A DNA stretch of 64,000 nt from Octopus bimaculoides. Its lineage: Eukaryota. The translations under genes were made by a program, and so were the position numbers. Each line of letters starts with the position of its first letter. The stretch's first letter is position 1. The DNA lies in contig NC_068999.1 of assembly GCF_001194135.2 (NCBI RefSeq), forward strand, positions 51,904,758-51,968,757. Reading direction: 5' to 3'. The notes beneath the pieces were generated by a model. It was not told the origin of the DNA. It saw nothing but the letters and a program-made list of their open reading frames with translations, and ran no database searches. Below are positions 1-61,945 of the stretch, piece by piece.

Positions 1-81
1 ATGTGATAAGGCTGAACCTTTGAAATAATATATTGTTCGAAAAGAAAGGTGAGAGAGAGGTGGGGAGGTGGAGACAGACAA

Positions 82-200
82 GTACTTAACTAATAATTTA
101 TCAACCCTGAAAGGATAAAAGTCAATGTTAACCTCAGCAGGATTTGAACTCAGAACAAATACTGCAAGGCATGCTCATTGATGCTCTAACAACTTTACTA
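82..200 (-). mobile_element. Degenerate tRNA-derived SINE fragment (family B, head ...ctgagttcaaatcctgctgaggtt...)
   Basis: Reverse complement resembles the related copies at 60583-60790 and 63425-63620. Confidence 0.55.
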
Positions 201-929
201 ATTCATCTCGTACATCATTAAAATGTATAAAATTTGTTAGATGTATAGAATTAAATGGTCATGATTGCTATCTTCTAATGTTAAGGCATGTATTATTTGT
301 AAATATTTTCTTTNNNNNNNNNNNNNNNNNNNNNGTGATTAAATTGTTTGTAAACAAATTGTGACTCCGTAGCCCTGTTGTGAATGCTCACTTTCCATTG
401 GTGTTTGAAAAAAAAAATACTTTAAGATGAAGAATACTTCAACATTATTAATCACCATCAGTAATTCCAGTGTAATCATCCTCACTATATCATCATACAC
501 ATTGAAAAGTCTTTTATATTTTTTGCTAAACTTGTTGGTTTCTGTAATTGGTCATGCAGCAGCACTGCCTCCAATGGCTTAGTTGATTATATTGACACCT
601 CTTTGCAGTACTTTGCCTGGTACTCGTTTTATCAATCTCAGAAAAGAAAATGGTTAAGTGAGTTTAAGCAGGATTTGTACTCAAAAGATCAAAGGGTTTC
701 GCCAAATAACGTAAGTTATTTTGTCCAATATTCCACTAATTCTGATGACAATTTCTTTGTGGTTCTTAGAGTTATGATGCCCATATGTAAAAAAAAAACA
801 TGATAGAAAGTTGCAGGTCTTTGATCTGAGGTAGCATCAGTCCCAACCTTCCAACCGTAGTGAGGTCAACAGTTTGTACTCTGTCACCACTTCCAAGCTC
901 TGTCTTTATCTTGTATCAGGCATAGGTCT

Positions 930-1207
930 GTCATGAGCCCCAGGTCTCATAAAGTTGAAGTTTAGCTTAGTTTCTATGGTGTATAGGTGACTGAGATTAC
1001 AACACTCACTCGTAAACTGATTGCTAACCCATTACAGTTTTAATTTCCCATCTATTGCTGGAATTTATTTACTGCTGATTGGGCTTTGAGCAACATGAAA
1101 TGAAATGTTTTGTTCAAGAACACAAAGCGTTGCTCAGTCTGAGAATTGAAACTATGGTCTTACAGTCATGAGTGCAACAACCTAACCACTAGGCCATGTG
1201 CTTTCAC
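930..1207 (-). mobile_element. tRNA-derived SINE (family C, MetaSINE-like)
   Basis: The reverse strand has an A box (tggcctagtgg) and B box (gtttcaattc), then gtgttcttgaacaaaacatttc; same family as 13566-13880. Confidence 0.7.
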
Positions 1208-1913
1208 AATTCGTCTCAGGCACTTAACTCATTATGGCAGATTTCAGAACTTCTGGTAGACTTTAGATTAGAGATAGTTTTGGAAATATCTTCTGGTGTA
1301 TTCCTTCAAGATTTTTAGTGGTGCGGCAACAATTTAATGAATTTTGTGTTAATGGTTTTAATTTTTGTTTATATGATAATAAAATACCTCTTTTAATGAA
1401 GTCTATTTATCAACAATTTAGTTTCTACAAAATATATGACATCAACCTTTTAAAAATGTTTTATATGTAAATGGTTTTAAATTTTAGATCTCTTTTGGTT
1501 AAAAAGAAAAAGAAAAGATGATTCATTTCATTAGTCTGCTTCTGAACAATGTAAACCACTTTCTGATAAATGAATGTGTGTATGAGAAAGAAAGAAATAT
1601 AAGGGTAAAAGGAAAGAAAAAACAAAAAGAGAAAGTTTTTTTTTTGAAATTTGCCATTAAAATGTTCCAATAAAATATTAGAGATTAATTTCAGATTTTT
1701 GGTCTATTAATTAACCTTGTCTTTTGTGTTACTATTTTCTACATCATTAATATGTAAATTTTTATGAGTGTCTTGAAATTATCAATGAAGTTGTTTGTAC
1801 TCTGTGTGTGCGCGTGTGCATCTGTGCGTATGTGTGTATGCATGTCTGCGCACAGTAAGCAGGCAGATAAAAGAAGAAAATTTTTCCTTGCTCATGAGTT
1901 CTGTTATACATTG

Positions 1914-2070
1914 GTGCAGACATGGCTGTGTGGTTAAAAAATTTACTTCAGAACCACAAGGTTAGGGTTTCGGTTTCACTGCATGTACACTGTCAGCTGA
2001 TATCCTCAACTATTAGTGAGAATTAACCAATGCCTTGTGAAATTTGGTATATAGAAACTGGAAGAAACCC
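1914..2070 (+). mobile_element. Degenerate SINE 5' half (family A)
   Basis: ggtgcagacatggctgtgtggtt...ccttgtga...tttggta...gaaactggaagaaaccc resembles the copies at 17486 and 39815. Confidence 0.6.
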
Positions 2071-2330
2071 ATCATCATATGTCCGTTTTCCATGATTTCA
2101 TGGGTTGAATGGAGCTGGTAAGACTAAGGGTCACACCTGGCTCCGTTGTCTGTTCTGGCATGGTTTCTACAGCTGGATGCCTTTCCTAATGCTAACCACT
2201 CCGCAGAGTGTACTGGGTGCTTTTTATGTGGCAGCAACACGTTTTTAACGTAGCACCAGCATGAGTGCTTTTTATGTGGCACCAGCACTTAGTATCAGTT
2301 CTGCTGTGACAGATGGGTTTTCTTGAGTAC
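2071..2330 (-). mobile_element. RTE-type 3' tail repeat
   Basis: catcatcat...tttccatg...tttctacagctggatgcc...cctaatgctaaccactc is shared with the better-preserved copy at 8275-8610. Confidence 0.65.
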
Positions 2331-3805
2331 AGTAAGGCACTAGATATCTCAGTCCTTTGTCATCTCATCGGTGGGTGTAATTGAGTCTGTATTCCTCTTG
2401 TAGTGTGACATGTGCTGATTGTAAACAACAATATCACTGTTTAGACAAACTGTGTTATTTGTTTGCAATCCTTCATGAAAGCATATTTAAGCTGTTCATT
2501 GTTCAAAACACTGGGGGAATAATTATTTGGCTTTGAGGGTTGACACCAGGAAGGAAATCCAGCCCAAGAAGATTCTGTTTCAACGAGCCTAAGCAAGTAT
2601 GGAAAAGTCAGCATTAAAATGACGACAGTGGTGATAATGATGATGGTGCCACTGTCTCCTCCCACCAGTTTGATCTCTTGTTTTCTTGAGTTGTTTGTTA
2701 ATTTGCAGTTCCTGCTGGTAATGACTTATATAGAGTTACATCAATTGTATAACATCATATGATGGTATTGTGAGCTGAAGGATTAAAAAAGACTCCCCAT
2801 CACATCAATCAAAATGCAGTCGATAAATACACTGAGAAAGATGTAAATAGACCAGACATTTGTCATAATGTTAATGCTAATACTTCCCCAAAATTTAGAA
2901 TTGCATATTTCTATTTTTGCTTGGTATTTGGTGTTTGTATCTTAAAACCCAGACATTCTAAAGTAGCATTGATATAACTGAGCACCACCAGAGGAAATGA
3001 TAATGTCAGAAGGCGCTGAAATTACCATGATTTCCAATCAATAGTTGATGATGGAAATGTCCTGCTGTGTAAGTTGCAATAGGGGATGAGAAACAGCTAT
3101 TAATATATAAGCTGTTGATATCAGTACAATCATAATAATGTTTGTGCTGAAGCAATAGGCTATCTATACAAATTCCACAAACCATTTGAAACCCCAGCTG
3201 AAATGGTTTCATTTGTTTGTTACTAAAACCATATGTAAAAGTACATATCAACTTCTCAGTCTTGCTTTCAATTGCATATTTATGTATATGTTCCCATCAC
3301 TAGTTTTGTACAGTGGCATACAGCCTTCATCATCTGATTACTACTCTTTGTTGCCTGAAACTGAATAGGAGGAACCGATATATAGCAAAGCAAATAACAA
3401 AGATATGTACAAGAGATACTAGCAGTTAATACTGTTGGGTTAATGGAAGGAAAGAATAAAAGTTACAGGGTAAAAGTTATAACTTTTCAAACATCCTCCC
3501 TCATCAGACACTAGAGGAAAGTACATGAGGGACTGAGAAGAGAAGGAAGAGAAATTAAGAAGAAAAAATGAGCCAAGAAAAAATTGCATGCAGTTCAGAT
3601 TTACAGTGCATGCATGGTTGCGTAGTTAAAATGTTCTCATAACAACCATAAACTTATTGCCTCTAGGTTTTTGTTTTCTTTCTCCTACTAAAGTGCAAAT
3701 TTCAATTGACTTAGAATTTGTGGCATACATCGTTAAGCACATCAACACCTACATGTTTAATTTAGATCTCAATTTACTCAGCACACATTTTTTTTTTTAC
3801 TGATC

Positions 3806-4060
3806 ATGGCATAGGGGTTAAGATGTTAAACTCATGATGATAAAGTTATGGGTTCAATTCCTAGGTGGCACATTACGTACTTAAGTGTGACACTTCATTT
3901 CATGTTACTCCAGTCTACTCAGCTGGAAATGAGCACCAGCCAAGTACTGGTGCAACCCTTTCTCCCTTCGCCTGTCATGTCACGTCATTGGTGTTTCATC
4001 AGGTCAAGGGTAGGAGAGCCAAGAGGATGTCTGTCTCTCATAACAGCTACATAGCTAATT
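3806..4060 (+). mobile_element. tRNA-derived SINE (family C), degenerate
   Basis: tggcataggggtt A box, gggttcaattcc B box, ctccagtctactcagctgg core as in 13566-13880. Confidence 0.65.
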
Positions 4061-4132
4061 AAAGTAAATACTGAAACCATGGTACATGCTAACATTCTTC
4101 TTTGCTAGAAAGTGACAGCTAGGGATTTACAT

Positions 4133-4482
4133 GAAAGCACAGCTGTGGAGTTAAGAAGTTTGCTGCCTGACCACATGGTCATTGGTTCAATCCTGTTGTA
4201 TGGTATCTTGGACAAGTGTCTTCTATTAAATCCCTGAGCCAACCAAAGCCTTGTGAGTGGATTTAGTAGACAAAAATTTAAAGAAGCTTGTGTGTCCTTA
4301 TCTTGGCTTCACATGATTAATTTCCAGTGTGAAAACTAGGAAAAATTTGGAAATATTACCTTGCTTGGAAATAGGTGAGAGTTGGTGACAAGAAGGGCAT
4401 CCAACCCTAGAAAATCTGCCTCTGCAAACTCTGCCCAATCCATGCAAGCATGGAAAAGAGGACATTAAAACAATGATGATGA
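4133..4482 (+). mobile_element. Family A SINE head followed by RTE-type 3' tail ending in (GAT)n
   Basis: caaccaaagccttgtgagtggatttagtagac core; later gggcatcc...catggaaaagaggacattaaaacaatgatgatg. Confidence 0.7.
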
Positions 4483-6677
4483 CTTACAAATACACAATCA
4501 CACACATTCACATATATCAAAGTGTTTATTATTTGTAAAATGTTTTTCTATTGTGTATTTTATATGATTATAGGATCTACTAAGCACTTAGAAAACCTTG
4601 TAATAGGTTTTAACTTAGCTGATGGTTTACAGCAAGGTCCATTTCATATTGTTTCAGCTGATAATAGAATAAACTGTCTCCCACTGAGTTTGATCCCTTT
4701 TATTTCACTTTAGTTCCTAATGTTTATTCTACTTAACCATTATGATAAATTATGATTTTCTCTCCAGCACTACATCATGTCATGACCAATATTATTCCTC
4801 ACTCATAAAAGAAATGTATTTAGTATTTGGCTTTCCACCAACTTACCAAGCTGCAGGGTTCAATATAATATACTGAAATTACTTCCTGAAGAATTTCCGT
4901 TTTGTGTTAGATGATATATTGCTTGGAAGCTCTGTGCTCTTGCATCCAATAATTTGATGCTTTTCATAATATATGATCAAAATCTTTCTGGATATCTCCA
5001 ACTATCAGAATAATTTCTGCAAACACTTGATCAATATAAACTACTTCGCATTACTTTACCCACCTAACTAAGCCATCTGTAAGTAAACCCTTAATAACTC
5101 ATCTAGCATACTGTTATTTACTACACATATTATAATAATTATAGATTATTATTATTATATTTAATTTGTAGACTTCTGAGTGTTGAGAAATAATCAATAA
5201 AGATACCATTTGGCAGGGTGAGGGTGTTTTTTCTTTTTCTTTTGGTTTTGATTTCCACTCACAATGATAAAAAACAAGCAGATAAAAGAAGAATGGTTTC
5301 TCTTAACTATGCTTTTTGTTCCATATTCTCACCAGTTATCTCTTAGTTTTCTTCATCTGTATGTTGATTTGTTGTTCTTGCTATTGAGAAAACTTATGGG
5401 TCTGTAAAGTTACATCAGTTTTATACATCTTATATGATGAGTCTATGAACCGGGGCTAATTTATCCACTCTTTTATTAGTTTCAATCATATGGCTGTGGC
5501 TCTGCTGGGATAAACTTCTTCTTAGAAAATTTACACCCCAACATTTTTTTTCGTCTTTGTTTTAAATTTAGTTTTTTTATGTTCTGTTACTAATTGCCCT
5601 GGTTGCTACCTGTTTTGAAGCTATAAATTTTTAAACATAGTCAGATATGGCCATGCAGTTTAGAAGTTCACTTCACAATTACAAACTCTTATATTCTGTC
5701 CCACTGCTTAGCACCTTGGGTTAGTTATCTTCTACACTTGCTTCAGGCTGACCTGTGTGATTGAAATTGAGACGAAAACTGCTTGAAAGCCTGTTAAACT
5801 CACAAACACCAAATGCATTCTATTGAGTGCGGAGTTGAGAAGTCCTTTTAGTTTTGTCACAGACATGACAACTTCTCTAATGTTTTCATGCCATGGTGAA
5901 TATACCTAGTACACTCTGTCAAGTGATTGACATGAGAGGTACCATCCAGCTCATCTAAAAGCACAGTGACAATCATCCAACTCAGGCCAGTTTAAAAGCA
6001 AATGTAAAACAATGGTAATAATGATGATGTAAGTCTGTGTATTTGGTGTGTGAAAGTTATCACTTTTGCTCCTTGCATGAGATCTGAGGAATGAAAAAAT
6101 AAATGTTGTCACTGTGGTTACATTTCTGGTGAACATGGTGTTCACCAGAAATGAGAACACAGCTCTGCACTCTCGCATTAGTAGGATATAAAGTCCTCCT
6201 CATGTAAAACAAGCAAGGGTTGGTGACAAGAAGAGCTTCAAACCATAAAAATACTATCTCTGATAAGTAACTGTCCACCTTATTCCAGCATCGAAAAACT
6301 GATGTAAAATGTGTAAGTGAAGCCAGTATTAACATTGAACCCTGAGTCGACCCTGATCAAGCAAACCTACTATCAGAAATATTCCAACTGGGAACATCCT
6401 CACCCCATTTTTTCTTTTGCATGTCTAGGACCACAATATCTAATGTGTCTTTCCTTTTCCCTTTTTTAAAGTTGGTATGGTACAATTTAACGGAGATTTG
6501 GCTGTTATTTTTTATAGAGTTTGTGTTTTGGTACTCAGCTTTGGTCTGATATTCCTTAGAATCAATTAAATGACTGTTAGTAATAACCATTAATTATAAA
6601 CAAGAATGATGCATGTCCTAGCTTAAAGTTGCATCACACATTTTAAAATATGTCTTGGCTGAGAACATAAAACAAAT

Positions 6678-6678
<1 letters not shown>

Positions 6679-6711
<33 letters not shown>
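6679..6711. repeat. (CA)n microsatellite
   Basis: Read directly from the sequence. Confidence 0.95.
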
Positions 6712-6714
<3 letters not shown>

Positions 6715-8048
6715 TTTATTATGGCATTATCAAACTATGATTGATGAAGAAATTTTCTTTCTTTTGTCATTGTTTTTCTTTGATACTGTTCAGAAAAACC
6801 TTGTATGTTTAATTCATTGTTTAAGATAATCTTTTTAAAAGTAATTTCTTGACAAAATATTAATTAGGTTATTGTATGTGATCAGGGTTTTGTTTTGATA
6901 TCTGAACAAAATTTATTTATTTATCACTTTGTCTAGAAAGAGAGGTTTCTTTTTTATGTATTGTTTTGCAATGTCTGCTGTATAATAAATAATTGACTCT
7001 CTTCTGCATCAACTATTGTTTGTGTCTCTCTTCAGAAGTTTTATGTTTTGGGGGATTTTTTTTTTTTTTTTTTTTTTTGTTTAATATTTTTTTAAAGTCA
7101 AACAGGCTTTGTTAACTTTTGAAAAATAAACAAATAAAGAAACATATCCTACTCTTTTGCTTACAAGAACTAATTTTCTCTGAACAGTAGGAGACTTCTG
7201 TGTTCAGATACGCATGTGTATAACCAAAATATGCACAGACATACACTTGTACACACGTTTGAGGATTTTTTTTCTCCTTTTGTGTAGATTTTAAGATGTT
7301 TTCTTTGTATTGATTGTTTCAAAATTGATATTGTTTTATTTCTCACCTGCTGTATTTTTATAAATTTATCAAGTCATGGCAAAGTCTAACTGGATAATGA
7401 GTATTAATGCCTGTAACATTAGAGTCATAGCTGGTCAAGTTGATAGGATGACAAACTAGACTGTCAGCTGAAAGGTCATTTGTTTCTATGCTCACGTTGG
7501 CTCAGTCCATCTAGCTATAAATAGGTACCAAAGGATAAGTGATTTATTGACATGCTAGAAATAGCAACTAAATTGTATTCTACTGTCTTCTAGTCCCTGC
7601 TTCCACACCTGAAACTTCTCCTCTAGTTCTGATAGTGACTCAACAATTAAAGGAAAGAAACTTTGAATAATATTGTCGCTGATTTACTAAAAAGATCATG
7701 AGGGTCATGGCTGGAATGCCTTTGATCATAGTTATGCTCAATCAAGGACAACCCAGAACTAAACAACAACTCACCACTGTGTGCTGAAGGAGAAATGTGA
7801 AATTAATGAGTATTTCATTAGAATGTAGTACTGAGTTTAACTGTTTCCATGCATTTAGTTGACATAATTTACATAACAATGAAGCAGTGTCCTCAATCTA
7901 GTATGAAAACAGATCTGCAGATAGACAAAAACTACATTTCGTTTTATTATTATTTGATGCTTTATTTCTATTGTTTCTGTTTTGCTTCTCTTCACTGTTT
8001 CCGTCTTTGTGTCATATATCAGTTCAGCTTTTAAAATTTTAACTTTAA

Positions 8049-8268
8049 CCTTTTAGCATTCAAACCGGCCATATCTGACCAAAATATTTAACCTACTTTA
8101 TGTTGAAACTGGCTAGATCTGACCTCTCACATCAATCCTACAAAGCTATTCTAAGACTAAACAAGCAGATCATCGAAATCTTGAAGCTATGAGATAATAC
8201 ATGATTAATTCAAAACAATGTGAATAAATAAGGGTTAGGTTTGACAGAATAATCTGAATGTTAAAGGG
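8049..8268. mobile_element. piggyBac-like MITE (family P1) with TTAA target-site duplication
   Basis: TTAA 8045-8048 then ccttttagcattca; tgaatgttaaaggg then TTAA 8269-8272; termini are inverted repeats. Confidence 0.85.
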
Positions 8269-8274
8269 TTAAAC

Positions 8275-8610
8275 ATCATCATCATCATCATTTAACGTCC
8301 GCTTTCCATGCTGGCATGGGTTGGATGATTTGACTGAGGACTGGTGCAACCAGATGGCTACACCAGGCTCCAATCTAATTTGGCAGAGTTTCTACAGCTG
8401 GATGCCCTTCCTAACGCCAACCACTCAGAGAGTGTAGTGGGTGCTTTTACGTGTCACCCGCACGAAAACGGCCACGCTCGAAATGGTGTCTTTTATGTGC
8501 CACCCGCACAAGAGCCAGTCCAGGGCCACTGGCAACGGCCACACTCGAAATGGTGCATCTCATGTGCCACCCGCACAAGAGCCAGTCCAGGGGCCCTGGC
8601 AACGATCTCG
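8275..8610 (-). mobile_element. Well-preserved RTE-type 3' end/UTR repeat with internal 67-bp tandem duplication
   Basis: (CAT)n then ttaacgtccgctttccatgctggcatgggttgg...tttctacagctggatgcccttcctaacgccaacc; CpGs retained, suggesting a young copy. Confidence 0.75.
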
Positions 8611-10754
8611 TGAAAATTTCTAAGTCAGAAGCTCAGTCCTGTAATGATTGAGCAGAAAATATCTGAAAATTGGTTTGTTTATTCAAATGCTTATAGTATC
8701 TTATGGTCAAATTATTGTGAAAATTGGTGGTATTGCAGACAAGATTTAGTTGCTCTTGTTTTTTAATATAAGTAGCCATTTGTGTTTAAAATAATATTGC
8801 TCTGGTTATCATCTCCAAGGCATTTTCTGCTATCAAATCATTGAATAAGTTGTTTCTCAAAGATTAGCATCCATTTTTGAATGAGATTTTCAATAAAAGT
8901 CTGAACTCAGCAAAAATTTGGCAATACATTGGTCAATGTTAATAATGAACTTTACAGAATGCAAATAAATGATACAGGGAAATGATAGAGCCAAACAAGG
9001 CTGGTTTGAGTCATGTAGTTTCAAACAGTATAGAACTAATAACTAGATGCAGTACTGTGTGACTTTGTTGTTTTACAAGATATTAAGAGTTAATTTTATA
9101 TTAGTAATGTCTTCTCCTTATCTCATTGTCATCTATGTTCCATCTGCACCTTAATCAACTCTGACCATATTCCTTGTTTACAACCAAATTTCTGATATAG
9201 CTGGAATTGGTAAACCCCATGATAAAATCTGATCAAACTAAAAATATATCAGTTAATCTGAATAAAGATAAAGATATCAGTACAAAAGTAGACTGTTTAC
9301 AAATGTTTGATCACAGATAGTGCTATTTTAGATGTTTGAGTATTTTGCCTAATTTTTCAACCATGAAGTTCACTACACCCACTCTCTTCTGGGGAGAAAA
9401 GACAGCAGCATAGTTTACAGTGGAAATTGAGTCAAATGTATCCAAAGGAGGACTCAAATACAGTTGAAGATGCAAGGTTTCAAGTTAAGTGATAATCATG
9501 TCTCACACAAGGAGACATGGTTCTCATTCAATTGACCGTAATTGACCTGGTGACTCCACCAGTGCTGGTGCCACAAGAAGACCACTCAGTAACTCTATGA
9601 AGTGTCGGTGGCATGTAAAAAGCATACAGTACACTCTGTAAAGTGATTGGCATCAGAAAGGGCATCCAACTGTTGAAACCTTGCAAAAAGCATACAATGG
9701 AGACCAACACAACCCTCAATTTAGATGGATTGTTTTGAACCATCCAACTCATTACCAGCATTGAACACAAACATTTAACTATGATGATGATTCACAGATT
9801 GTCAGTTCCGCATAATTATTGTTTCAGTTCTGTAGTTTTCAGCATCTTTTTCATGTAAGACAATTACATTTTTATGTGTCCTGAGGTGGAGCTCAGGTGT
9901 ATAAAACCTAGTTAATATAATCACACTGAGTGCCAACAGAGTTAATTTTAACTTCTCATTTTGATTTTTGCCCTATAATCATTTGTTCTATGATTTCAGG
10001 CAATCACTGTCTCATTTCAATTTTGTCTTATTCTCTCATTTATAATCTCATTCTAGTTATGTTTTAAACAAGCTTTTCTTATCTTTGTCTCTTGCCAATA
10101 TTATTCACAACCTAATTTTATATTTGCTTCAATCTCATCTCTTTATCTTTTATCATCTGTTTTTGATAGACCGTCTAATTCAGATTGTTGACATCTCTCA
10201 CATACAATGTCTCTTCATCGTCTAGCTGAAAAAAAAAAATCTTTTTTTTCTTTTTTTTATCTGTACTATTTTATTGGAGTAAAATGAATGCTCCAAGAAC
10301 TATTTACGATATTATTGCCAGTAATGTGATGCAAGCAGATCTAAATACCCAGTCTTTGGAAATGGGATTGTGCCAATGACAGTAATTTGACAGATTTTAA
10401 GGAAATTCTTTTGTAGCTCCAACTTTTACATATTTACATTTTACATATATGAGGGCATTAATGTTCGACTTTAACTACCAGCACCACTTATTCTTATCTC
10501 AAAACAATCCTGGAGCAAGTTAGATGATCCAAACTAATCTCACAAGCACACATGCACACAAAGATTTGTGTTATAAACATATATCTAATGTTACCTTTGT
10601 AAAACTTTCAAAAGTTGGCACATCTCTCCACTTTCGAAGCTCAAGATTAGTAAAATAAAATGCTGTTATCTCTGGACAAAGTAATACTTGTCATGAGATA
10701 ACCAACACATTAGTTATGGTTCAAGGAATCATTTGTTGAAATTTTATTTGTTAA

Positions 10755-10968
10755 CCCTTTCGTTACAGCATTTATTTTGAGATGCTCTGTGTTTCTTTCA
10801 ATCACTTTAAATATAACAAAGAATTTAGTAAAATAACTGAGTTATCATTCAGCTAGTGTTAGGAACATAAATTGTGACTAAGGTTTGGTGGAAGATTTTA
10901 ATTCAAAACTTACGAAAACAAGACATTTGCACTCAGAGCCGGTTTCAACCAGGCTGGTAACAAAAGGG
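10755..10968. mobile_element. piggyBac-like MITE (family P2) with TTAA target-site duplication
   Basis: TTAA 10751-10754 then ccctttcgttac; gtaacaaaaggg then TTAA 10969-10972. Confidence 0.85.
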
Positions 10969-11167
10969 TTAAATCCTTACATTTATTACATTGGTTGATA
11001 CTTGGCTATAATAGAAGATACTTGCCCAAGGTGATGTGCAATGGGACTGAACCCAACACTGAGAGGTTATAAAGCCAATTTCTTAACCACATTGCCATAA
11101 GATATTTGTCCCCCCTATTTAAATTTGTTTTTGTTTGTTTTATCTTTTTGACCATTTTACTATTTGT

Positions 11168-11248
11168 CTAATGTACTTTTTTGTTTTCTTTTTGCAGGTA
11201 AGTTAACCTATTACAATTACACTAAGCTGTAGAAAAGTAGTGGTATGT
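11168..11248 (+). other. Candidate recursive splice site (ratchet point) with downstream 45-nt cryptic RS-exon
   Basis: CTAAT branch motif 11168-11172, pyrimidine tract 11176-11193, CAG ending 11197 directly followed by GTAAGT 11198-11203; second donor TG|GTATGT at 11243. Confidence 0.6.
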
Positions 11249-12589
11249 AAAAAGACATTTATTAATTTAAACATGTGTGACATTGTTGTCGTCATTGTTT
11301 TTATGTATTCCATGCTGGCATGATTCAGACAAGAGTTATTATTGCAGTAATCTATATATAACTGAAAGCTCTTCTTTTCACCAACCTTCACCTGTTTCTC
11401 AGGTAAGGCATTTTTATTCCACTGGTCTTTTTCATGTTGAAACCACTAAGCTACCAAATTTGTTCACAGGATTTGTTAACATAATGTCACTGTTGCTCAA
11501 GCAGTATAATGCAGAGACACATGGAAATAAACATTCACACACACACACACACACACATATACATGTGACAGGCTTCCATATGACACCATGTATTCACGAG
11601 GCTTTGGTTGGCATGGGACTGATGCAAGTATGTAAAAGTTAAGACAATTATAAGCTTCAGCACAGCTACAAATTTAGACTAAAGATGAAAACCTGAAGAC
11701 AAATAACTCACTTATAAATAAAATGAATTGCATTGTCTGTCTGTTAGTTTGCACTGATGTAATAAAGACTAAAGACCCCCTTAGGTCATGAATTTATCCA
11801 TTCATGCACCATATATTAATTAATGTCACATAGCTAACCCAGCACTTTTCATGTCTAGGTGCTTTTTCAACTCACCTGTATATGGCCTTTCTTATTAAGT
11901 TAACATTTCAAACCTTACAAATCATACTCATTTTAGTTTTCTCTAGCAGAAAATTTGCTGCATTCACTACTCATATTTCACTTTCAAACAAATGTACAGT
12001 TTTAACATATTCCTCACAGAAGCTAACATTCATATAAAAAGAGAAAGTCAATAAAACACAAATAAATATTACTTTAATACTCTACTTCAGCTCTAGTCAT
12101 TATAATTTCAATAGCTCTGCTACATCCGGCACTACTTATGTCACCTGGGTAACAGAACTTACATTTCTAAGTGAGCTAGTTGAGAAGTGTACAGGCTTTT
12201 GCTTAAGTGTAGCCTAACTTAACAGTTACATTAGGCCACACTTTATTCTCAATGTAGTTGAAAAAGAATTTTCAATCAATTAAAATTATACTCATAATTA
12301 GAAGAAAAGTCATTAATAAAGAAAATTCATCTCAAATGAGACAAGGGAGAAAACTCTGAAATTGAGATTTTAACTGACTATAAAGCACCTTTTATAACCA
12401 TGGTTACCACTAACGTATTGTCTTTAATAACTGGCCATGTCTATAACAAAAAGCTCTGTGGTATTTATTCTGGTTCCTGCATTCTGAGTTCAAATCCTAT
12501 TGAGACCAATTTTGTCTTGCATCTTTCTGGGGTCAATAAATAAAATATTAGTCTAGAGTGATGTGGAGGTGCATGACTTAGTGGATAGG

Positions 12590-18000: not shown

Positions 18001-18704
18001 ATATATGTGTGTGTGTGTGTGTGTGTGTAATCATCACTATAAAACACCTTACTTTGCTTGCATGGGTCACATGGAATTTGTTGAGGCAAATTTTCTATGG
18101 CTGGATTCTCTTCCTGTCACCAACCCTCACCTGATTCCCTTGTCTGTATCTGTTTCCACAGACAACTAGAAACAAATTACACTGCTTTTATGATGGCAGT
18201 ACTTGCAACTCTCATGTAATGTCAAGACAAGCCCCCCCACACACACACACACACACCAGATCTGTATACCAAATTTCACATGAAATCAATCAACCCAAAG
18301 TTATAGTTGACAACATAATTGTGAAGTGAACTTCTTAGATTACGTGACCATACCTGCTTATGTACAAAAAAACCTATTATTTCATTAATATTTTAATTAA
18401 TATTGGTTCAAATATCTTTTACAGTAAAGATATTGGGAAGTACATATCACATGTAAGCATAATTCTTTTGGTGATGGGGATGGATTGGTGGTTGTTTTTA
18501 GATATCGACACATGTTAAATACAAACTGTAATAATTTTGACTGTACAAATAATTGCTAGAAGCAAGATAATTAGCATACCATAACAGTTAATTGTACTTT
18601 TAACTTCCTTGATTATGTTGTTATTTCAATCACAATAGCTAAATTTGTGAATCTAGTTTCCATTCTCCATTCAGTATTACAATCTCTGTTATTTCTAGAC
18701 TTGA

Positions 18705-24044: not shown

Positions 24045-24260
24045 CATCATCATCATCATTATCATTGTTTCAGAGCCCACATTTCCATGCTTGCATGGGC
24101 CAGGCAGTGTCTGTTGAGACAAACTTACAGCCAAAAGTCCTTCCTGTCACCAACCCATATCTGTTTCCAAGCAAAGTAACATTTTGCCATGGCCAGACAT
24201 GTTTTCCCAGAATATTAGAAATGAATGACACTCCTACAATCATGTGATGTCAAGACAAGG
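24045..24260 (-). mobile_element. RTE-type 3' tail repeat
   Basis: (CAT)n...tttccatgcttgcatggg...cttcctgtcaccaaccc...tttccaagcaaagtaacatttt motif is shared with many copies in the window. Confidence 0.65.
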
Positions 24261-26946: not shown

Positions 26947-26956
26947 NNNNNNNNNN

Positions 26957-30739: not shown

Positions 30740-31255
30740 ATCATCATCGTTTTAACATCCACTTGCATGTTTGGACAGAGTTTATTGAGACAGATTTTCT
30801 ATGGCCAGATGCCTTTCTGTTATCAGCCCCACCTGTTTCCAAGCAAGGTAATATTTTCTTATGACCAGACATTTTCATCGTGCAGTGTCAAGGCAAGGAG
30901 ACAAACATATGTACGTTCACACACACACTTTCCGGAGGGACAAGTTAAAAAAAAGAAGCCATATCTGGCCACTTTTCTCCCCATATATTATACATCAACC
31001 CTTCCTGAATATTTTTCTTTAGTTCCTGGTAAACAGAATGTATTTTGCCAGATCAACAATTTGGTTTTTATATATGCATCCACACACACACATTCATACA
31101 TAGAACCTCAGTTTCCAAATACCAAATCCACTCTCAACACTGGCTAGCCTGAGGCTATAGTAGAAGACACTTATCCAAAGTGCCACACAGTGAGACTGAA
31201 CCCAGAACCGTGTGGTTGGGAAGCAAACTATTCAACCACATAGCCACACCTGCTT
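30740..31255 (-). mobile_element. RTE-type tail (30740-30900) and family A SINE head (31095-31255) just upstream of Rab6 exon 2
   Basis: catcatcgttttaacatccacttgcatg...; gaggctatagtagaagacacttatccaaagtgccacacagtgagactgaacccagaacc. Confidence 0.7.
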
Positions 31256-31488: not shown

Positions 31489-31632
<144 letters not shown>

Positions 31633-38500: not shown

Positions 38501-39674
38501 AATAAAACTTGAGTACTTAAATGAGTGCATATCAATCAAATTCTTTCCCTCTAATTAGTCTTCATTTTGTCAAATTTACCCAACTCATTTGTCCTTCTTC
38601 CTAGTCATTGTTTTAGCATTTACTTTTCCATGTTCACATGACTGGGACAATTTGTTGCAGCACCATTTTCCTACGCTTGGTTGCCATTCCAGTTACCAGC
38701 CTTCACCTGTTTCCAAGGTGATATTCCCTCATGACCAGACCTGTTTTCATGGCAGACTGGAAATGAAGAACACTTGGGATGATGGTGACACTTGTTTACA
38801 ACCATCATGCAATGCCAAGGCACAGAGACAATAACACACACACAGACAACAGGTTTCTTTCAGTTACCATCTACTAAATCTATTCACAAGGCTTTGGTCA
38901 GCTCAAAGTTATAGAAAATGACATTTGACCAATGTGCCACAGAGTGAGGCTGAACCAAAAATCCTGCAAATGGAAAACAAACTTACCACACTGCCATTTC
39001 ATTACTAGTTTCTGTTTCTTTTGTGATGCCCCAGAATCTTGTCTGTCAGCTTTTTTTAGTCCATTGATCGTCTCTTATTTTCTAGACATGTCCAGCTCAA
39101 CTCCATTTCAATGGGTTTTTTTTTTTGTAATCCATTTAATTTTTCTGCACCAATCCAACCATAATGTATTCATAAGCATGTTGAATTGCTTTTCACGTGC
39201 TCATACTTGTAATTATCATCGTTGTTTTAACGTCCATTTTTCTATACGTGAATGAGCAAGACATAGTTTGTTGAGGTGAACTTTTTTTTTTATGTACGGG
39301 TGCCCTTTCTATCACCAACCTTCACTTGTTTCCAAGTAAGGTAATATTTCCCCTTGACAAGATATGTTTTCACGGAAGATTGGAAACGAAGGATCAAAGG
39401 ACACTACTTGCATGACATTATAATTATCATGTGACGTCACGGCAAGAAGACCAGTAATACACATTCAAATACATTTATATGCATGTGTGCAGCACACACA
39501 CACAAACACATCAAATTAAATATACAACCAAAAGAGCTACTAATAGTTTTGTGCTACTGTGATACTTGAACAGGCATTTTTATAAAATACGCCATGTATC
39601 TTAAAGCAATCTTTTAGGCTCTGTTTATGTGTTATATATAATTTTTTTTATATATTTTATTTTTATATATATGA

Positions 39675-39814: not shown

Positions 39815-41147
39815 AGGAGCGGCTGTGTGGTAAGTAGCTTGCTTACCAACCACATGGTTCCAGGTTCAATCCCACTGCGTGGTACCTTGCGCAAGTGTCT
39901 TCTACTATAGCCTCGAGCTGACCAAAGCCTTGTGAGTGGATTTGGTAGGCGGAAACTAAAAGAAGTCCGTTCTGTGTGTGTGTGTTATATGTACATGTAG
40001 ATGAAGGTATGTACATACATGTACATATATATGCATATACTCATATATTGTTTGTATCACAACAGAACGCACTCATTGACCTTTATACAGTAAGTTTTAA
40101 CTATCTTTCTAACGTGACTCTCTCTATCTCTATATCTATCTCCCCCTCTCATTCTTCCCTCTACTGTTTTTCGCCTCTACCTGTCACTACTATCTCTCTC
40201 TCTATCTCTTGTTACTCGTCCTTCACCTCTCACCGTTACTACTACTATCTCTCTCTCTCTCTCTACCTCTCGTTGCTCACATTTATTCTACTTCCTCCCC
40301 TTCTTTTCCCTCTGCTACTCTTACTCTCTCTCTTTACACAGCCTTGGTCATGTGTGTCCGGCTGNNNNNNNNNNNNNNNNNNNNNNNNNNNNNNNNNNNN
40401 NNNNNNNNNNNNNNNNNNNNNNNNNNNNNNNNNNNNNNNNNNNNNNNNNNNNNNNNNNNNNNNNNNNNNNNNNNNNNNNNNNNNNNNNNNNNNNNNNNNN
40501 NNNNNNNNNNNNNNNNNNNNNNNNNNNNNNNNNNNNNNNNNNNNNNNNNNNNNNNNNNNNNNNNNNNNNNNNNNNNNNNNNNNNNNNNNNNNNNNNNNNN
40601 NNNNNNNNNNNNNNNNNNNNNNNNNNNNNNNNNNNNNNNNNNNNNNNNNNNNNNNNNNNNNNNNNNNNNNNNTGGGAAGAACCATTTCAACGATGCGTAC
40701 TGCCTTAATTCTTCAAATCCCCGGTGTTTTAATGGTGGCAGCTGATGAAGGAGATGTTTCTATGTGGCTTGCTTGTTTGTTGTACCTTGTTTATCATTTT
40801 GTCCATGTTCTTTTGCCACGTCATGTACCAAGTTATGTATCTATATGTACATGTAGATGAAGGTATGTACATACATGTACATATATATGCATATACTCAT
40901 ATATTGTTTATATATATATATATATGTATGTATATTTGTGTGTGTGTGTTTGTCCCCCACCCCACCCCCAACATCACTTGACAACCGATGCTGGTGTGTT
41001 TATGTCCCTGTCATTTAGCAGTTCGGCAAGAGAGACCGATAGAATAAGTACTAGGCTTACAAAGAATAAGTCCTGGGGTTGATTTGCTCAACTAAAGGCA
41101 ATGCTCCAGCATGGCCGCAGTCAAATGACTGAAACAGATGAAAGAAT
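39815..41147 (+). mobile_element. Young family A SINE split by an insert (5' half 39815-39970; 3' half about 40930-41147)
   Basis: Well-preserved head ggctgtgtggtaagtagcttgcttaccaaccacatggttcc; 3' half acaaccgatgctggtgtgttt...catggccgcagtcaaatgactgaaac. Confidence 0.85.
39986..40909. mobile_element. Insert bounded by identical 68-bp direct repeats; possible non-autonomous Penelope-like element
   Basis: 39986-40053 is identical to 40842-40909; the interior has a CT-rich tract, an N gap (40365-40672) and a CTGATGA motif at 40742-40748. The element class is inferred. Confidence 0.5.
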
Positions 41148-42286: not shown

Positions 42287-42830
42287 ATAAAAATAACTAT
42301 ATAATAATATATATACTCCAATTTAAAGTGACATTTATCTAAACAATATATTATATTATATTANNNNNNNNNNNNNNNNNNNNNNNNNNNNNNNNNNNNN
42401 NNNNNNNNNNNNNNNNNNNNNNNNNNNNNNNNNNNNNNNNNNNNNNNNNNNNNNNNNNNNNNNNNNNNNNNNNNNNNNNNNNNNNNNNNNNNNNNNNNNN
42501 NNNNNNNNNNNNNNNNNNNNNNNNNNNNNNNNNNNNNNNNNNNNNNNNNNNNNNNNNNNNNNNNNNNNNNNNNNNNNNNNNNNNNNNNNNNNNNNNNNNN
42601 NNNNNNNNNNNNNNNNNNNNNNNNNNNNNNNNNNNNNNNNNNNNNNNNNNNNNNNNNNNNNNNNNNNNNNNNNNNNNNNNNNNNNNNNNNNNNNNNNNNN
42701 NNNNNNNNNNNNNNNNNNNNNNNNNNNNNNNNNNNNNNNNNNNNNNNNNNNNNNNNNNNNNNNNNNNNNNNNNNNNNNNNNNNNNNNNNNNNNNNNNNNN
42801 NNNNNNNNNNNNNNNNNNNNNNNNNNNNNT

Positions 42831-44047: not shown

Positions 44048-44101
44048 GCCACAATTGGAATAGATTTCCTATCCAAAACGATGTACCTAGAGGACAGAAC
44101 T
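44048..44101 (+). CDS. RAB6: Rab6 coding exon 3: [18 protein letters not shown] (switch I/effector region)
   Basis: Acceptor ttttccatttcag ends at 44047; 54 nt, phase 0-0; donor gtaagt at 44102. The peptide is the Rab6 effector loop. Confidence 0.97.
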
Positions 44102-48343: not shown

Positions 48344-49299
48344 TCAAGAGCAAATGATGCAAAATCAGTTAAGAAAAGTTTCTTTTTAAGTATTAAGATT
48401 AAATAATCGTCAATATGGAAACTCATAAATCAATAGCTCCATTGATTTATAAATTTATTTATTTATTCATTTTATAATTTTTATTTTTTAACTTTTCTAG
48501 GAGGAGATGTTGTTGCTTTCTCTCTAGAATGTACATTTTATCCCCTGTCGGATTTCATCGTAAACCAGTCTGAGCAAGGCATAAGAAAAAAATAAAAATC
48601 AATATAATCAGGATTTGTATTATTAGATGAAGATTATATATGACGATGAGAGATTTTAGATTGTTTCGGAAACATGTCTTCATACACACACACACACATG
48701 CACGTGTGCGTGCACATACGCACACACCATCATCATCATCTTTGTCATTTTAACATCCACTTTTCCATGCTTCTATGGCTCAGACAGAACTCATTCAGGA
48801 GATTTTATTCAGTCATATGCTTTTCCTCTCACCAACCCTCACTTGTTTCCAAGCAAGAAAGTGTTTGCCTTTGGCTGGACATGTTTTCACAAAAGATTGG
48901 AAAAGAGGGTCGCCACTTGTATGATGGTGATGCTCATTTATTTTATAATTCTCTTACAATGCCAGTTTAAGGAAAACACACACACATATATATCAAACAG
49001 ACATATGTATGTCCATTCCCTTGAACATCTCTCTTCAGCAATATATATATATATTTTGATATATATATATATATATATATATTCATCTGCATACAACTAG
49101 ATGATGCTAAAGAATCCCAATAGTTTCTGTGGTGATAGTTCATGCGAAGGTGTGGCTGAAATCTAGTAGTTCTTGTGTCACTCATTGGACTGTGGCCATG
49201 CTGGGGCTCCATCTTGAAGGGTTTAGTCAAACAAATCTACACAAGCACTTATTAATTTTAGGGTCTGATACTTATTCTAGAAGTTGCAAACTTTAAAAC

Positions 49300-51974: not shown

Positions 51975-52120
51975 CACAATAGGCTCCATACAGTTTCCCT
52001 CTACCAAGTTCACTTAGCATTTTGTCAACCAGGAGCTATAGTAAAAGATATTTGCCCAAGGTACCATGCAGTGGGACTGAATCCAAAACCACGCAGTTGC
52101 AAAGCCCACCTCTAGTCACA
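51975..52120 (-). mobile_element. Family A SINE head
   Basis: gctatagtaaaagatatttgcccaaggtaccatgcagtgggactgaatcc. Confidence 0.75.
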
Positions 52121-52830
52121 TAGCCATTAATTATCTGATTTCTCTGCAGTTTGCCACAGTTAATGCATATCTGTGTTAACCCCACCAACCCCACCTGCAA
52201 CAAATTGTCCAAAAAATTATCAGCCATGTCAAAGGCATAAAAGAAATAGTTATAGCCAGTACTGACATTTTGGACTTTTTTCTTTTTTCTTTTTTTGCAA
52301 ACAAGGTTTTGAACTGTCTTATATGTCTTCACAACTACATGACTCAAAAAAGAAAAAAGAACAGATTTTAAATTATCTTAACACTATTTTGCCCTCTAAA
52401 CTAGTAACCATTTCAACTGAAATTTAGATCTGTTCTCACCTTTATAATGGCTGTTAATGTTACGCTTGTATATGTTTGAATTATTTAACAGAATCACTTT
52501 GTATCTATACCTTACAAACAGATAAACTTAGATAAAAAATCTTTTACTTTTCATATTTCTCTCTTTCATTTACTCTCCATACTGTCTTTCCACAATAATT
52601 TCTCCCCTCCTATCCAGTCCCTTCCTCATCTTTCTTTTTCTTTCTTTTTTTTTTTTTCACTTCTCCCTTTCCTCTACCCTCTATATGTCTTGTTCCTCTT
52701 CTCATTATCACTTCTTTTTCCTCTTTTTGTGTATATCCCTGTCTAATCTCCATCTTTCTACATTCATTCCTTCCTACCTACTTACCTACCTATCTATCTA
52801 TCTCTGTTTGTATATGCATATGTGTTTGTG

Positions 52831-52870: not shown

Positions 52871-53708
52871 AAAATGAAAAATAATAATAAGGCAGAATGC
52901 TAAACTGGAAGCATATTTTAATAAAGATTTCTAACCGGCTTTCTTTGCATAGCAAATTTTCAAGAAGAGGGNNNNNNNNNNNNNNNNNNNNNNNNNNNNN
53001 NNNNNNNNNNNNNNNNNNNNNNNNNNNNNNNNNNNNNNNNNNNNNNNNNNNNNNNNNNNNNNNNNNNNNNNNNNNNNNNNNNNNNNNNNNNNNNNNNNNN
53101 NNNNNNNNNNNNNNNNNNNNNNNNNNNNNNNNNNNNNNNNNNNNNNNNNNNNNNNNNNNNNNNNNNNNNNNNNNNNNNNNNNNNNNNNNNNNNNNNNNNN
53201 NNNNNNNNNNNNNNNNNNNNNNNNNNNNNNNNNNNNNNNNNNNNNNNNNNNNNNNNNNNNNNNNNNNNNNNNNNNNNNNNNNNNNNNNNNNNNNNNNNNN
53301 NNNNNNNNNNNNNNNNNNNNNNNNNNNNNNNNNNNNNNNNNNNNNNNNNNNNNNNNAAAAAGGGTTAAAAGTTTGCGTTAAGCTGGAAGTGTGGTGTCAA
53401 AACAGGAAGTGTGTGTAAGGGGAGACAAATCTTTTTAGTTGGAGTTATGAAGATTTGTCTCCCCTTACACACACTTCCTGGTTTGACACCACTCTTCTTG
53501 CTTAACACAAACTTTTAACCATTTTTTAAAACCTAACACAACTCTCAATTCTCATGCATCCTTATTTTTCCAACCATTATATACATGGATTACCATTGAA
53601 CTTCAAAAGCTCAAAGACAATATAATGTATTGGTATAGTTATTTTTTTTATATATTATTTTCTTCATTTTGTACTTCTTTGTAAAAAACATTTTCATTCT
53701 CCCTCTTC
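52869..53708. mobile_element. Foldback element copy 2: left arm (with gap 52972-53356), 16-nt loop 53434-53449, right arm truncated at 53708
   Basis: 53357-53433 pairs with 53450-53526 at 71 of 77 positions; starts ta|ggaaaatg. Confidence 0.8.
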
Positions 53709-58220: not shown

Positions 58221-58433
<213 letters not shown>

Positions 58434-58905: not shown

Positions 58906-59100
<195 letters not shown>

Positions 59101-60389: not shown

Positions 60390-60790
60390 ATAATAATAAT
60401 AATAATCCTTTCTACTAAAGGCACAAAGCCTGAGATTTTGTGGGGAGAGAGCTAGTTAATTTCATTGACCCCAGTGCATAACTGGTACTTATTTTATTGA
60501 CCTTGAAACAGTGAAAAGCAAGGTTGACCTTGACAGCATTTGAACACAGAACATAAGACCACAAGAAATTCCACTAAGCAAAGGGGAGAGTGGAATGGCA
60601 GAATTGTTAGGGCATCAGACAAAATTGACTCATTATTACATTCTGACTTCAAATCCTGCTCTGGTCTACTTTGTCTTTCATCTTTCCAGGGTCTATAAAA
60701 TAAAGTACCAGTCAAGTACTGGATCAATGGTGTCAATAAAAACTCCACCTCACCTCTTAAAACAGCTAGCCTTGTGCCTAAGTTAGAAAT
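60390..60790. mobile_element. Head-to-head pair of family B SINEs (minus 60390-60580, plus 60583-60790)
   Basis: actggtacttattttattgacc on one side and ggtctataaaataaagtaccagt on the other; both end in cttgtgcct/ctttgtgcct. Confidence 0.75.

Positions 60791-61890: not shown

Positions 61891-61945
<55 letters not shown>

What the first reader, a model, noticed from the sequence alone, without database searches (positions are those of the whole stretch)
11168..11248. Candidate recursive splice site with a poison RS-exon in a probable cephalopod Rab6 intron
Seen: CTAAT branch motif (A at 11171, 26 nt before the end of the AG), an AG-free pyrimidine tract, then CAG|GTAAGT, a 3' splice site fused to a consensus 5' splice site. 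A second strong donor (TG|GTATGT) follows 45 nt later. Established: Drosophila ratchet points and vertebrate recursive sites have this AG|GT fusion, usually with a cryptic RS-exon defined by a downstream donor. Inference: the site splits the long first intron about 20.4 kb before exon 2. If the 45-nt exon were included after a phase-1 exon 1 it would read GKLTYYNYTKL-stop (TAG 11230-11232), an NMD-type poison exon. It sits in apparently non-repetitive sequence and is the only such fusion I found on the + strand. I am not aware of recursive splicing being characterised in molluscs.
Basis: partly seen in the sequence, partly recalled or inferred. Interest (0 to 1): 0.8.

Follow-up and report, generated by a model that had tools for sequence, protein, structure and literature searches.

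The report
Candidate recursive splice site, Rab6 intron
Inside a very long intron of a Rab6 gene there is a rare, textbook-looking "splice here, then splice again" signal; it could help remove the intron in two steps as in flies and vertebrates, but no RNA or cross-species evidence could be obtained.

Summary
CTAAT is at 11168-11172, followed by a 94-nt AG-free T-rich tract. Then come TTGCAG|GTAAGT (junction 11197|11198), a second donor GTG|GTATGT at 11243, and an in-frame TAG at 11230-11232. Rab6 exons 2-5 lie on the + strand at 31556, 44048, 58320 and 58988. Exon 1 is not in the window, so intron 1 is at least 31.5 kb and the site lies 20,358 nt before exon 2.

With a rough splice-site matrix of my own, the site ranks first of 359 AGGT positions on both strands. 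It scores 29.3 bits against 22.9 for the next best. Three null models expect 0.0003-0.003 such sites per window strand.

The site meets every sequence-level hallmark of fly and vertebrate recursive sites. It has TT at -6/-5, a branch A at -27 and a 45-nt cryptic exon. That exon's own donor is weaker than the site's donor, and the downstream intron segment is about 20 kb.

The site lies in a 155-nt repeat-free gap between two SINE-like copies. Conservation, junction reads and the cephalopod origin could not be tested. "Only such fusion" is overstated, because weaker ones exist at 11403, 25619 and 29657. The in-frame stop is uninformative (54% by chance).

Verdict: a good, unproven candidate, P about 0.5, and a new member of a known kind.

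The parts
11103..11194 (+). AG-free, T-rich polypyrimidine region upstream of the candidate 3' splice site (94 nt without AG; 61% T, 76% pyrimidine), with TT at -6/-5
   Evidence: The T content of the 60 nt upstream is in the top 0.4% of + strand 60-mers.
11168..11172 (+). CTAAT branch-point-like motif, A at 11171 (about -27 from the junction)
   Evidence: CTAAY occurs in the -36..-21 interval at 3.6% of random positions, and the looser YTNAY at 41%. Fly recursive branch points lie at -36..-21.
11195..11203 (+). CAG|GTAAGT: a 3' splice site fused to a consensus 5' splice site (junction 11197|11198), the candidate ratchet point
   Evidence: acceptor 16.4 bits, donor 12.9 bits, combined 29.3, rank 1 of 359 AGGT sites on both strands. 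Null expectation 0.0003-0.003.
11198..11242 (+). 45-nt cryptic RS-exon; in phase 1 it reads GKLTYYNYTKL-stop (TAG 11230-11232)
   Evidence: The phase follows from the start of exon 2 (TT GGC) and from the conserved intron position in a nemertean. The stop is not informative (54% by chance).
11240..11248 (+). Downstream donor GTG|GTATGT (GT at 11243) that would define the RS-exon; it is weaker than the ratchet-point donor
   Evidence: 6.9 bits against 12.9. A donor this strong lies within 25-120 nt of 10% of random positions.
10950..11108 (+). SINE-like repeat copy that ends about 90 nt upstream of the site (not part of the signal; context)
   Evidence: 12 copies in the window. The family alignment loses all similarity after about 11108.
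11270..11610 (+). Copy of a second repeat family starting about 27 nt after the RS-exon donor; it contains the weaker AG|GTAAGG at 11403 (context)
   Evidence: family consensus CACCTGTTTCCAAGnAAGG at that position.
31556..31614 (+). Rab6 exon 2 ((V)[19 protein letters not shown]), the acceptor of the proposed second splicing step; its donor is CAG|GTAAGT at 31615

Best explanation
The site at 11197|11198 is an intronic recursive splice site (a ratchet point) in the first intron of Rab6, which is at least 31.5 kb long.

Proposed mechanism (inferred, not shown):
1. As the + strand is transcribed, the branch point near 11171, the long U-rich tract and the CAG are recognised as a 3' splice site. 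The GTATGT donor 45 nt downstream helps by exon definition.
2. Exon 1, which must end in G, is ligated to 11198. This removes the upstream part of the intron and rebuilds a strong donor, G|GTAAGT.
3. That rebuilt donor outcompetes the weaker GTATGT donor and is spliced to exon 2 at 31556. This removes the remaining 20.4 kb together with the 45-nt cryptic exon, so nothing from the site remains in the mRNA.
4. If the downstream donor is used instead, the 45 nt are included and bring in an in-frame TAG.

What is shown: the motif, its rarity, its position and strand relative to Rab6 exons 2-5, and the phase. What is inferred: any use of the site in vivo.
For: Strength and rarity of the motif:
- The combined acceptor-plus-donor score is the best of 359 AGGT sites on both strands. 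It is 6.4 bits above the runner-up, and its acceptor is stronger than all four real Rab6 acceptors in the window.
- The chance expectation is 0.0003-0.003 per window strand under three nulls.

Match to published features of recursive sites:
- TT at -5/-6, seen in 196 of 197 fly ratchet points.
- Branch points at -36..-21.
- Host introns of 11-133 kb and segments averaging 18 kb.
- A cryptic RS-exon of about 50 nt, with the ratchet-point donor stronger than the RS-exon donor. Here the exon is 45 nt and the donors score 12.9 against 6.9 bits.
- Mouse recursive sites are enriched for AGGTAAGT plus a pyrimidine tract, and 75% lie in first introns.

Position:
- The rebuilt donor keeps G at -1. Exon 1 must supply the G of the conserved Val codon, G|TT.
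- The site lies in a 155-nt gap between two repeat copies, not within either family's alignable region.
- The T>A skew of 1-31 kb (-0.05 to -0.065) matches that of the confirmed introns 2 and 3. There is no CpG island or exon 1 in the window.
Against: - There is no RNA evidence of any kind.
- No orthologous intron could be obtained, so the hallmark conservation of real recursive sites is untested.
- Exon 1 is outside the window.
- In vertebrates recursive splicing at fixed sites is rare: 20 sites in mouse brain, in introns over 51 kb. If this lineage is vertebrate-like, the prior is low.
- A genome of a few Gb would still hold roughly 100-300 equally strong chance fusions, extrapolating.
- The scoring matrix is my own approximation of metazoan splice-site frequencies, not one trained on this species.
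- The T-rich tract may simply be a decayed repeat tail or microsatellite lying next to the SINE copy.
- The finding was picked out after reading the sequence, not predicted beforehand.
Confidence: 0.5

Rival explanations
1. Chance juxtaposition. A T-rich stretch happens to end in CAG and to be followed by GTAAGT. The stretch may be the decayed tail or microsatellite of the neighbouring SINE-like copy. The site is not used, or is used only as low-level splicing noise, and is not under selection.
For: - The flanks are repeat-rich: the SINE core ends at about 11108 and a second repeat starts at about 11270.
- Three + strand AGs have acceptor contexts as good as this one, so strong pyrimidine tracts arise here without function.
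- A TE-derived near-miss (11403) shows that such fusions do arise by drift.
- At about 0.003 per 62.5 kb strand, a genome of a few Gb would carry on the order of 100-300 such sites.
- The accessory features are individually common: the downstream donor 10%, YTNAY 41%, the stop 54%.
- Fixed-site recursive splicing is rare in mouse and no more common in lungfish than in human.
Against: - The expectation per window is only 0.0003-0.003. It falls about tenfold further if the correctly placed weaker donor is also required.
- The site lies on the sense strand of a long first intron, at a typical segment distance from exon 2.
- A 3' splice site stronger than every real acceptor in the window is unlikely to be ignored by the spliceosome.
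Confidence: 0.35
2. A genuine alternative 45-nt cassette or poison exon (11198-11242). It would be included in a regulated fraction of Rab6 mRNAs to lower expression through the in-frame TAG. The GTAAGT at its 5' end would then be incidental, or would make it an expressed RS-exon of the vertebrate type.
For: - The interval has a strong acceptor, a usable donor 45 nt downstream and an in-frame TAG.
- Mammals have many expressed RS-exons.
- In mouse, many AGGT candidates turned out to be unannotated exons: 46 of 84.
Against: - The donor that defines the exon (6.9 bits) is much weaker than the rebuilt donor (12.9 bits). Under the donor-competition rule established in flies and mammals, this predicts skipping.
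- The in-frame stop is expected by chance (54%).
- No transcript evidence is available.
Confidence: 0.1
3. The site lies outside the Rab6 transcription unit, or belongs to another transcript. It might, for example, be the donor of an unannotated upstream or alternative exon, or lie upstream of a Rab6 start hidden in an assembly gap.
For: Exon 1 is not in the window in any frame. The assembly has gaps at 314-334 and 26947-26956.
Against: - The gap between the site and exon 2 lies inside a (CT)n run.
- No window has promoter-like CpG content; overall CpG o/e is 0.21.
- The strand skew is uniform from 1 to 58 kb.
- There are no long ORFs, Rfam hits or tRNAs nearby.
- An exon ending in a 90-nt U-rich, AG-free tract would be odd.
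Confidence: 0.05

Closest known systems
Drosophila intronic ratchet points ('zero-nucleotide' recursive splice sites; Ubx, kuz, luna; Burnette 2005, Duff 2015, Joseph 2018/2021, Pai 2018)
   Same: - A (Y)n TT N CAG|GTAAGT fusion.
- A pyrimidine tract more prominent than at ordinary acceptors.
- A branch A at about -27.
- A long host intron and a segment of about 20 kb.
- A short cryptic exon (about 50 nt) closed by a weaker donor and carrying a premature stop.
   Different: - Different phylum. The Rab6 peptide looks lophotrochozoan.
- The host is a housekeeping GTPase gene rather than the developmental and neural genes typical in flies.
- Conservation and junction, lariat or saw-tooth evidence define the fly set. 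None of it is available here.
Vertebrate recursive splice sites with RS-exons (Sibley 2015; mouse brain set of Moon and Zhao 2022)
   Same: AGGTAAGT plus a strong pyrimidine tract, a preference for the first intron, an exon-definition step through a downstream donor, and a PTC if the RS-exon is included.
   Different: - Vertebrate sites lie in introns over 51 kb, within genes over 294 kb that are expressed specifically in the brain.
- Here the intron is only known to be at least 31.5 kb, and the gene is Rab6.
- Vertebrate sites are deeply conserved; that is untested here.
Cryptic or pseudo-exons created next to retroposon tails (Alu-type exonisation; DMD pseudoexons)
   Same: A strong U-rich tract next to a SINE-like element supplies a 3' splice site, and a nearby fortuitous donor closes a short, stop-containing exon.
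   Different: - The T-rich tract is not part of the alignable repeat consensus.
- The consensus donor fused directly to the AG is not a feature of ordinary exonisation. It is what makes this a recursive-type site.

Membership tests
Intronic recursive splice site (ratchet point) | [quoted passage not shown] | tested here: met
   TTGCAG|GTAAGT at 11192-11203. It ranks first of 359 AGGT sites, and the null expectation is 0.0003-0.003.
Intronic recursive splice site (ratchet point) | Prominent polypyrimidine tract with TT at -5/-6 and a branch point about 21-36 nt upstream (Duff et al.) | tested here: met
   TT at -6/-5; 89% pyrimidine in -20..-2; 94 nt without AG; CTAAT with its A at about -27 (criteria).
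Intronic recursive splice site (ratchet point) | Lies on the sense strand inside a long intron (above about 11 kb in flies, above about 50 kb in mouse) | tested here: inconclusive
   The site is on the same strand as Rab6 exons 2-5 and 20,358 nt before exon 2. Exon 1 is absent from the window, so the intron is at least 31.5 kb. That the site lies downstream of exon 1 is inferred from the strand skew and the lack of a promoter, not seen directly.
Intronic recursive splice site (ratchet point) | Cryptic RS-exon: a downstream donor within some tens of nt, weaker than the ratchet-point donor | tested here: met
   GTATGT at +45 scores 6.9 bits against 12.9 for the ratchet-point donor. By chance this occurs at 10% of positions.
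Intronic recursive splice site (ratchet point) | Evolutionary conservation of the AG|GT core and tract above that of the flanking intron | not testable with these tools
   Three protein searches returned no cephalopod or mollusc Rab6. An exact-ORF look-up failed. The only genomic orthologue fetched, from a nemertean, has a 450-nt intron 1. A metagenome scan was empty.
Intronic recursive splice site (ratchet point) | Splicing intermediates: exon-to-site junction reads, saw-tooth coverage, recursive lariats | not testable with these tools
   No RNA-seq data are accessible.
Poison (NMD-targeting) cassette exon | Exon with an in-frame premature stop or a frameshift | tested here: met
   TAG at 11230-11232 in phase 1. 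A stop is expected by chance in 54% of cases, so this is not discriminating.
Poison (NMD-targeting) cassette exon | Detectable, regulated inclusion in mRNA, stabilised when NMD is blocked; usually conserved | not testable with these tools
   There are no transcript data. The relative donor strengths predict skipping.

The most novel reading that the evidence does not exclude
A lophotrochozoan, probably a mollusc, removes the greatly expanded first intron of a housekeeping gene (Rab6) by fly-type zero-nucleotide recursive splicing through a cryptic 45-nt RS-exon. That would extend ratchet-point splicing to a third major animal lineage. It would also suggest that the mechanism is ancestral to bilaterians, or is readily re-invented when introns expand.
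Probability: 0.45. Interest if true: 0.5.

Novelty: new member of a known kind. Interest (0 to 1): 0.4.

Why it matters
In the literature I could search, recursive splicing has been demonstrated in flies, human and mouse, and tested in lungfish. I found no paper that characterises it in a mollusc or any other lophotrochozoan.

Genomes with very long introns outside vertebrates and insects are a natural place to ask whether fixed recursive sites are a general answer to intron expansion. This site gives a precise, cheap test: one RT-PCR primer pair, or a look at existing total-RNA data, at one junction of a broadly expressed gene.

If the site is used, the same motif scan could be applied genome-wide. 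If it is not, that shows even a near-perfect motif is a poor predictor in this lineage.

Tried and rejected
1. Orthologous introns. Three searches of the protein collection were run: the exon 2-5 peptide, a full-length guess and the C-terminal half. They returned only other animals' Rab6. The lists were capped at 120 and no cephalopod or mollusc entry appeared, so there was no route to a related genomic locus.
2. An exact look-up of the 121-aa ORF next to the site (11277-11639) found nothing on record.
3. A scan of metagenome contigs for the 25-mer spanning the site found no matches.
4. The cockroach Rab6 look-up gave only transcripts. The nemertean locus gave the intron position and phase, but its intron 1 is only about 450 nt, so it holds no comparable site.
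5. Exon 1 was searched for in six frames with several conserved motifs and by tblastn. It is absent.
6. Repeat membership of the site itself: there is no second copy of 11109-11263 in the window. Both flanking families stop aligning before the site.
7. Rfam, tRNA and tandem-repeat scans found nothing at the site.
8. I rejected the in-frame stop as evidence (54% by chance).
9. I rejected the neighbouring AG|GTAAGG at 11403 as a second ratchet point. It is a mutated repeat consensus, and a score of 22.9 bits or more is expected about 0.2 times per window strand.
10. Sibley et al. 2015 could not be read, because the id I recalled is not held.

Full report
**1. What is in the sequence**

- CTAAT is at 11168-11172, with its A at 11171.
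- A T-rich tract follows, with no AG for 94 nt upstream of the splice-site AG.
- TTGCAG ends at 11197 and is followed directly by GTAAGT at 11198-11203.
- Forty-five nucleotides later comes GTG|GTATGT, with its GT at 11243.
- In phase 1 the 45 nt read G-K-L-T-Y-Y-N-Y-T-K-L-stop, with TAG at 11230-11232.

**2. The host gene**

A tblastn search with a Rab6A sequence written from memory, followed by manual reading, places four Rab6 exons on the + strand.
- Exon 2: 31556-31614 (cag|TT GGC AAG ACT ... TAT CAG|gtaagt).
- Exon 3: 44048-44101.
- Exon 4: 58320-58425.
- Exon 5: 58988-59099.

The spliced peptide is 110/111 identical to the annelid, nemertean and unnamed transcript-derived Rab6 proteins listed. 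The only difference is DLSEKR where the others have DLSDKR. This fits a lophotrochozoan, but "cephalopod" could not be verified.

Exon 2 begins with the last two bases of the conserved Val codon. Exon 1 must therefore end in G and is phase 1. The nemertean Tubulanus polymorphus has its intron at exactly this position and phase (...CAG AGT G|gtaagt ... cag|TT GGT), with an intron of only about 450 nt.

Exon 1 (..GNPLRKFKLVFLGEQS) is not present in any of the six frames of the window. Intron 1 is therefore at least 31.5 kb, and the site lies 20,358 nt before exon 2.

Three observations argue that the Rab6 start is upstream of the window and that the site is transcribed. This is an inference.
- The only assembly gap between the site and exon 2 (26947-26956) lies inside a (CT)n run.
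- No part of the window looks like a CpG island; overall CpG o/e is 0.21.
- The T>A strand skew is the same in 1-11197 (-0.053) and 11198-31555 (-0.065) as in the confirmed introns 2 (-0.077) and 3 (-0.067).

**3. Is it more than chance?**

I scored all AGGT positions with a rough acceptor-plus-donor weight matrix. The frequencies are generic metazoan values from memory, so it is only a ruler.
- The site scores 16.4 + 12.9 = 29.3 bits, first of 359 AGGT sites on both strands.
- The next best are 11403 (22.9), 25619 (21.5) and 29657 (20.8), all on the + strand. The best on the - strand is 19.0.
- Its acceptor outscores all four real Rab6 acceptors in the window (4.1-11.6 bits).

The expected number of sites at 29.3 bits or more per window strand is small under every null.
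- 0.0003 with independent bases.
- About 0.003 in order-1, order-3 and order-5 Markov simulations, at 1 in 300 each.
- 0.002-0.003 when the real acceptor-like contexts of the window are combined with the Markov probability of a suitable downstream 6-mer.

The accessory features add less.
- A donor of 6.9 bits or more lies within 25-120 nt of 10% of random positions.
- CTAAY falls at -36..-21 at 3.6% of positions, and the looser YTNAY at 41%.
- A stop in a fixed frame within 14 codons occurs in 54%. The "poison" property is therefore no evidence.

Extrapolating (inference), one such core motif is expected per 20-30 Mb of single strand. That is some 100-300 in a genome of a few Gb, and fewer with the correctly placed weaker donor.

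**4. Repeats**

The site is flanked by repeats but is not inside the alignable part of either.
- A SINE-like core has 12 copies in the window and occupies about 10950-11108. The family alignment loses all similarity after that point.
- A second family starts at about 11270. At 61842-62089 the distal part of this second family runs straight into a SINE core, so the two may be halves of one longer element.
- The 155 nt between them (11109-11263), which hold the whole signal, have no other copy in the window.
- The T-rich tract could be a decayed tail or microsatellite of the upstream copy. That would explain where a strong pyrimidine tract came from, but it is not shown.
- The neighbouring CAG|GTAAGG at 11403 lies in the second family, whose consensus there is CACCTGTTTCCAAGnAAGG. 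I regard it as a drifted repeat.

Rfam, tRNA and tandem-repeat scans found nothing at the site. The window has no long ORFs.

**5. Comparison with known recursive sites**

Duff et al. (bioRxiv 10.1101/006163) report the following for fly ratchet points.
- They resemble fused 3' and 5' splice sites, with a more prominent pyrimidine tract than ordinary acceptors.
- TT occurs at -5/-6 in 196 of 197 sites.
- Branch points lie at -36..-21.
- Host introns are 11-133 kb (mean 45 kb) and segments average 18 kb (median 16.4 kb).
- Conservation is strong.
- Only 6% of long introns are recursive.

Joseph et al. (PMC8605326) describe a cryptic RS-exon of about 50 nt closed by a donor that is generally weaker than the ratchet-point donor. 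The exon content is poorly conserved and often disrupts the reading frame.

Moon and Zhao (PMC8797253) find only 20 sites in mouse brain. These are enriched for AGGTAAGT and pyrimidines, 75% lie in first introns, all are in introns over 51 kb, and they are highly conserved.

The present site meets every sequence-level criterion: TT at -6/-5, a branch A at about -27, a 45-nt exon, 12.9 against 6.9 bits, a first intron, and a 20.4-kb segment. The two criteria that define the class experimentally, conservation and splicing intermediates, could not be tested.

**6. Attempts to test conservation**

Three searches of the protein collection returned no cephalopod or mollusc Rab6. An exact-ORF look-up next to the site found nothing. 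So did a metagenome scan for the 25-mer across the site. No orthologous long intron was therefore available.

**7. Most likely mechanism**

Inferred. Exon 1 is first spliced to 11198, using the branch point near 11171 and exon definition by the GTATGT donor. This rebuilds G|GTAAGT. That donor, the stronger of the two, is then spliced to exon 2 at 31556, which removes the remaining 20.4 kb and the 45-nt cryptic exon. Rare use of the downstream donor would include 45 nt carrying an in-frame stop.

**8. Weighing**

The likelihood strongly favours a real signal over chance within one window. The prior depends on how common fixed recursive sites are in this lineage, which is unknown. They are common in flies. 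They are rare in mouse, and no more common in lungfish than in human. The finding was also selected after the sequence had been read.

My estimates are:
- 0.5 that the site is used as a recursive splice site.
- 0.35 that it is an unused or noise-level chance fusion.
- 0.1 that it is an expressed alternative or poison exon.
- 0.05 that it lies outside the Rab6 transcription unit or belongs to another transcript.

**9. Novelty**

Full-text searches found no paper that characterises recursive splicing in cephalopods or molluscs. A recent preprint lists flies, mice and humans as the species where it has been identified. If confirmed, this would be a new member of a known kind in a new phylum. That is useful but not surprising, given the conserved spliceosome.

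Noticed in passing
window 10989-11108 and 11 other places (e.g. 52035-52137 +, 31153-31246 +, 61983-62089 +, 45144-45042 -, 16090-15984 -, 17602-17501 -): A SINE-like core (consensus ...GCTATAGTAGAAGACACTTGCCCAAGGTGCCATGCAGTGGGACTGAACCC...CTTCTTAACCACACAGCCA) is present in 12 diverged copies (about 65-74% identity) in both orientations. One copy sits about 310 nt upstream of the Rab6 exon 2 acceptor. ARAGORN found no tRNA genes anywhere in the window.
   Followed up: partly
window 11270-11610; copies 38573-38898, 39213-39348, 6295-6180 (-), 48763-48857, 18055-18137, 24083-24185; 61842-61952: A second repeat family is often preceded by (CAT)n or (TG)n runs. At 61842-62089 its distal part runs directly into a SINE core, so the two families may be halves of one longer element.
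   Followed up: partly
window 11403: A second AG|GT fusion (tttctCAG|GTAAGG, 22.9 bits) lies 205 nt downstream of the candidate. It is inside the second repeat family, whose consensus there is CACCTGTTTCCAAGnAAGG, so it is probably a drifted repeat rather than a second ratchet point.
   Followed up: yes
window 25619 and 29657: Two weaker sense-strand fusions lie in the same intron: CAG|GTCAGG (21.5 bits) and AAG|GTGAGC (20.8 bits). All four AG|GT sites scoring 19 bits or more are on the + strand in intron 1 and none is on the - strand. The independent-base null expects about 0.6, while the more realistic nulls expect more.
   Followed up: partly
window 26947-26956, 314-334, 40365-40672, 42364-42829, 52972-53356, 54290-54341, 59846-60085: There are seven runs of N (a draft assembly). 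The gap at 26947 lies inside a (CT)n microsatellite. Exons 6 onward of Rab6 were not found in 59100-64000, which contains a 240-N gap.
   Followed up: partly
whole window: CpG is strongly depleted (o/e 0.21, GC about 33%) and no CpG-island-like window exists. T>A skew on the + strand is uniform (-0.03 to -0.09 in most 4-kb bins).
   Followed up: yes
window 59085-59099 (exon 5 end); L004 (Tubulanus polymorphus OZ123234.1): The window's Rab6 has DLSEKR where every listed homologue has DLSDKR. The exon 1/2 intron position and phase are identical in a nemertean, whose intron 1 is about 450 nt against at least 31.5 kb here. Intron 4 here is only 562 nt, while introns 2 and 3 are 12.4 and 14.2 kb.
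   Followed up: partly
window 59100: The exon 5 donor is AAG AG|GTAAAA, the weakest of the four Rab6 donors in the window (5.4 bits). The other three are all GTAAGT.
   Followed up: no
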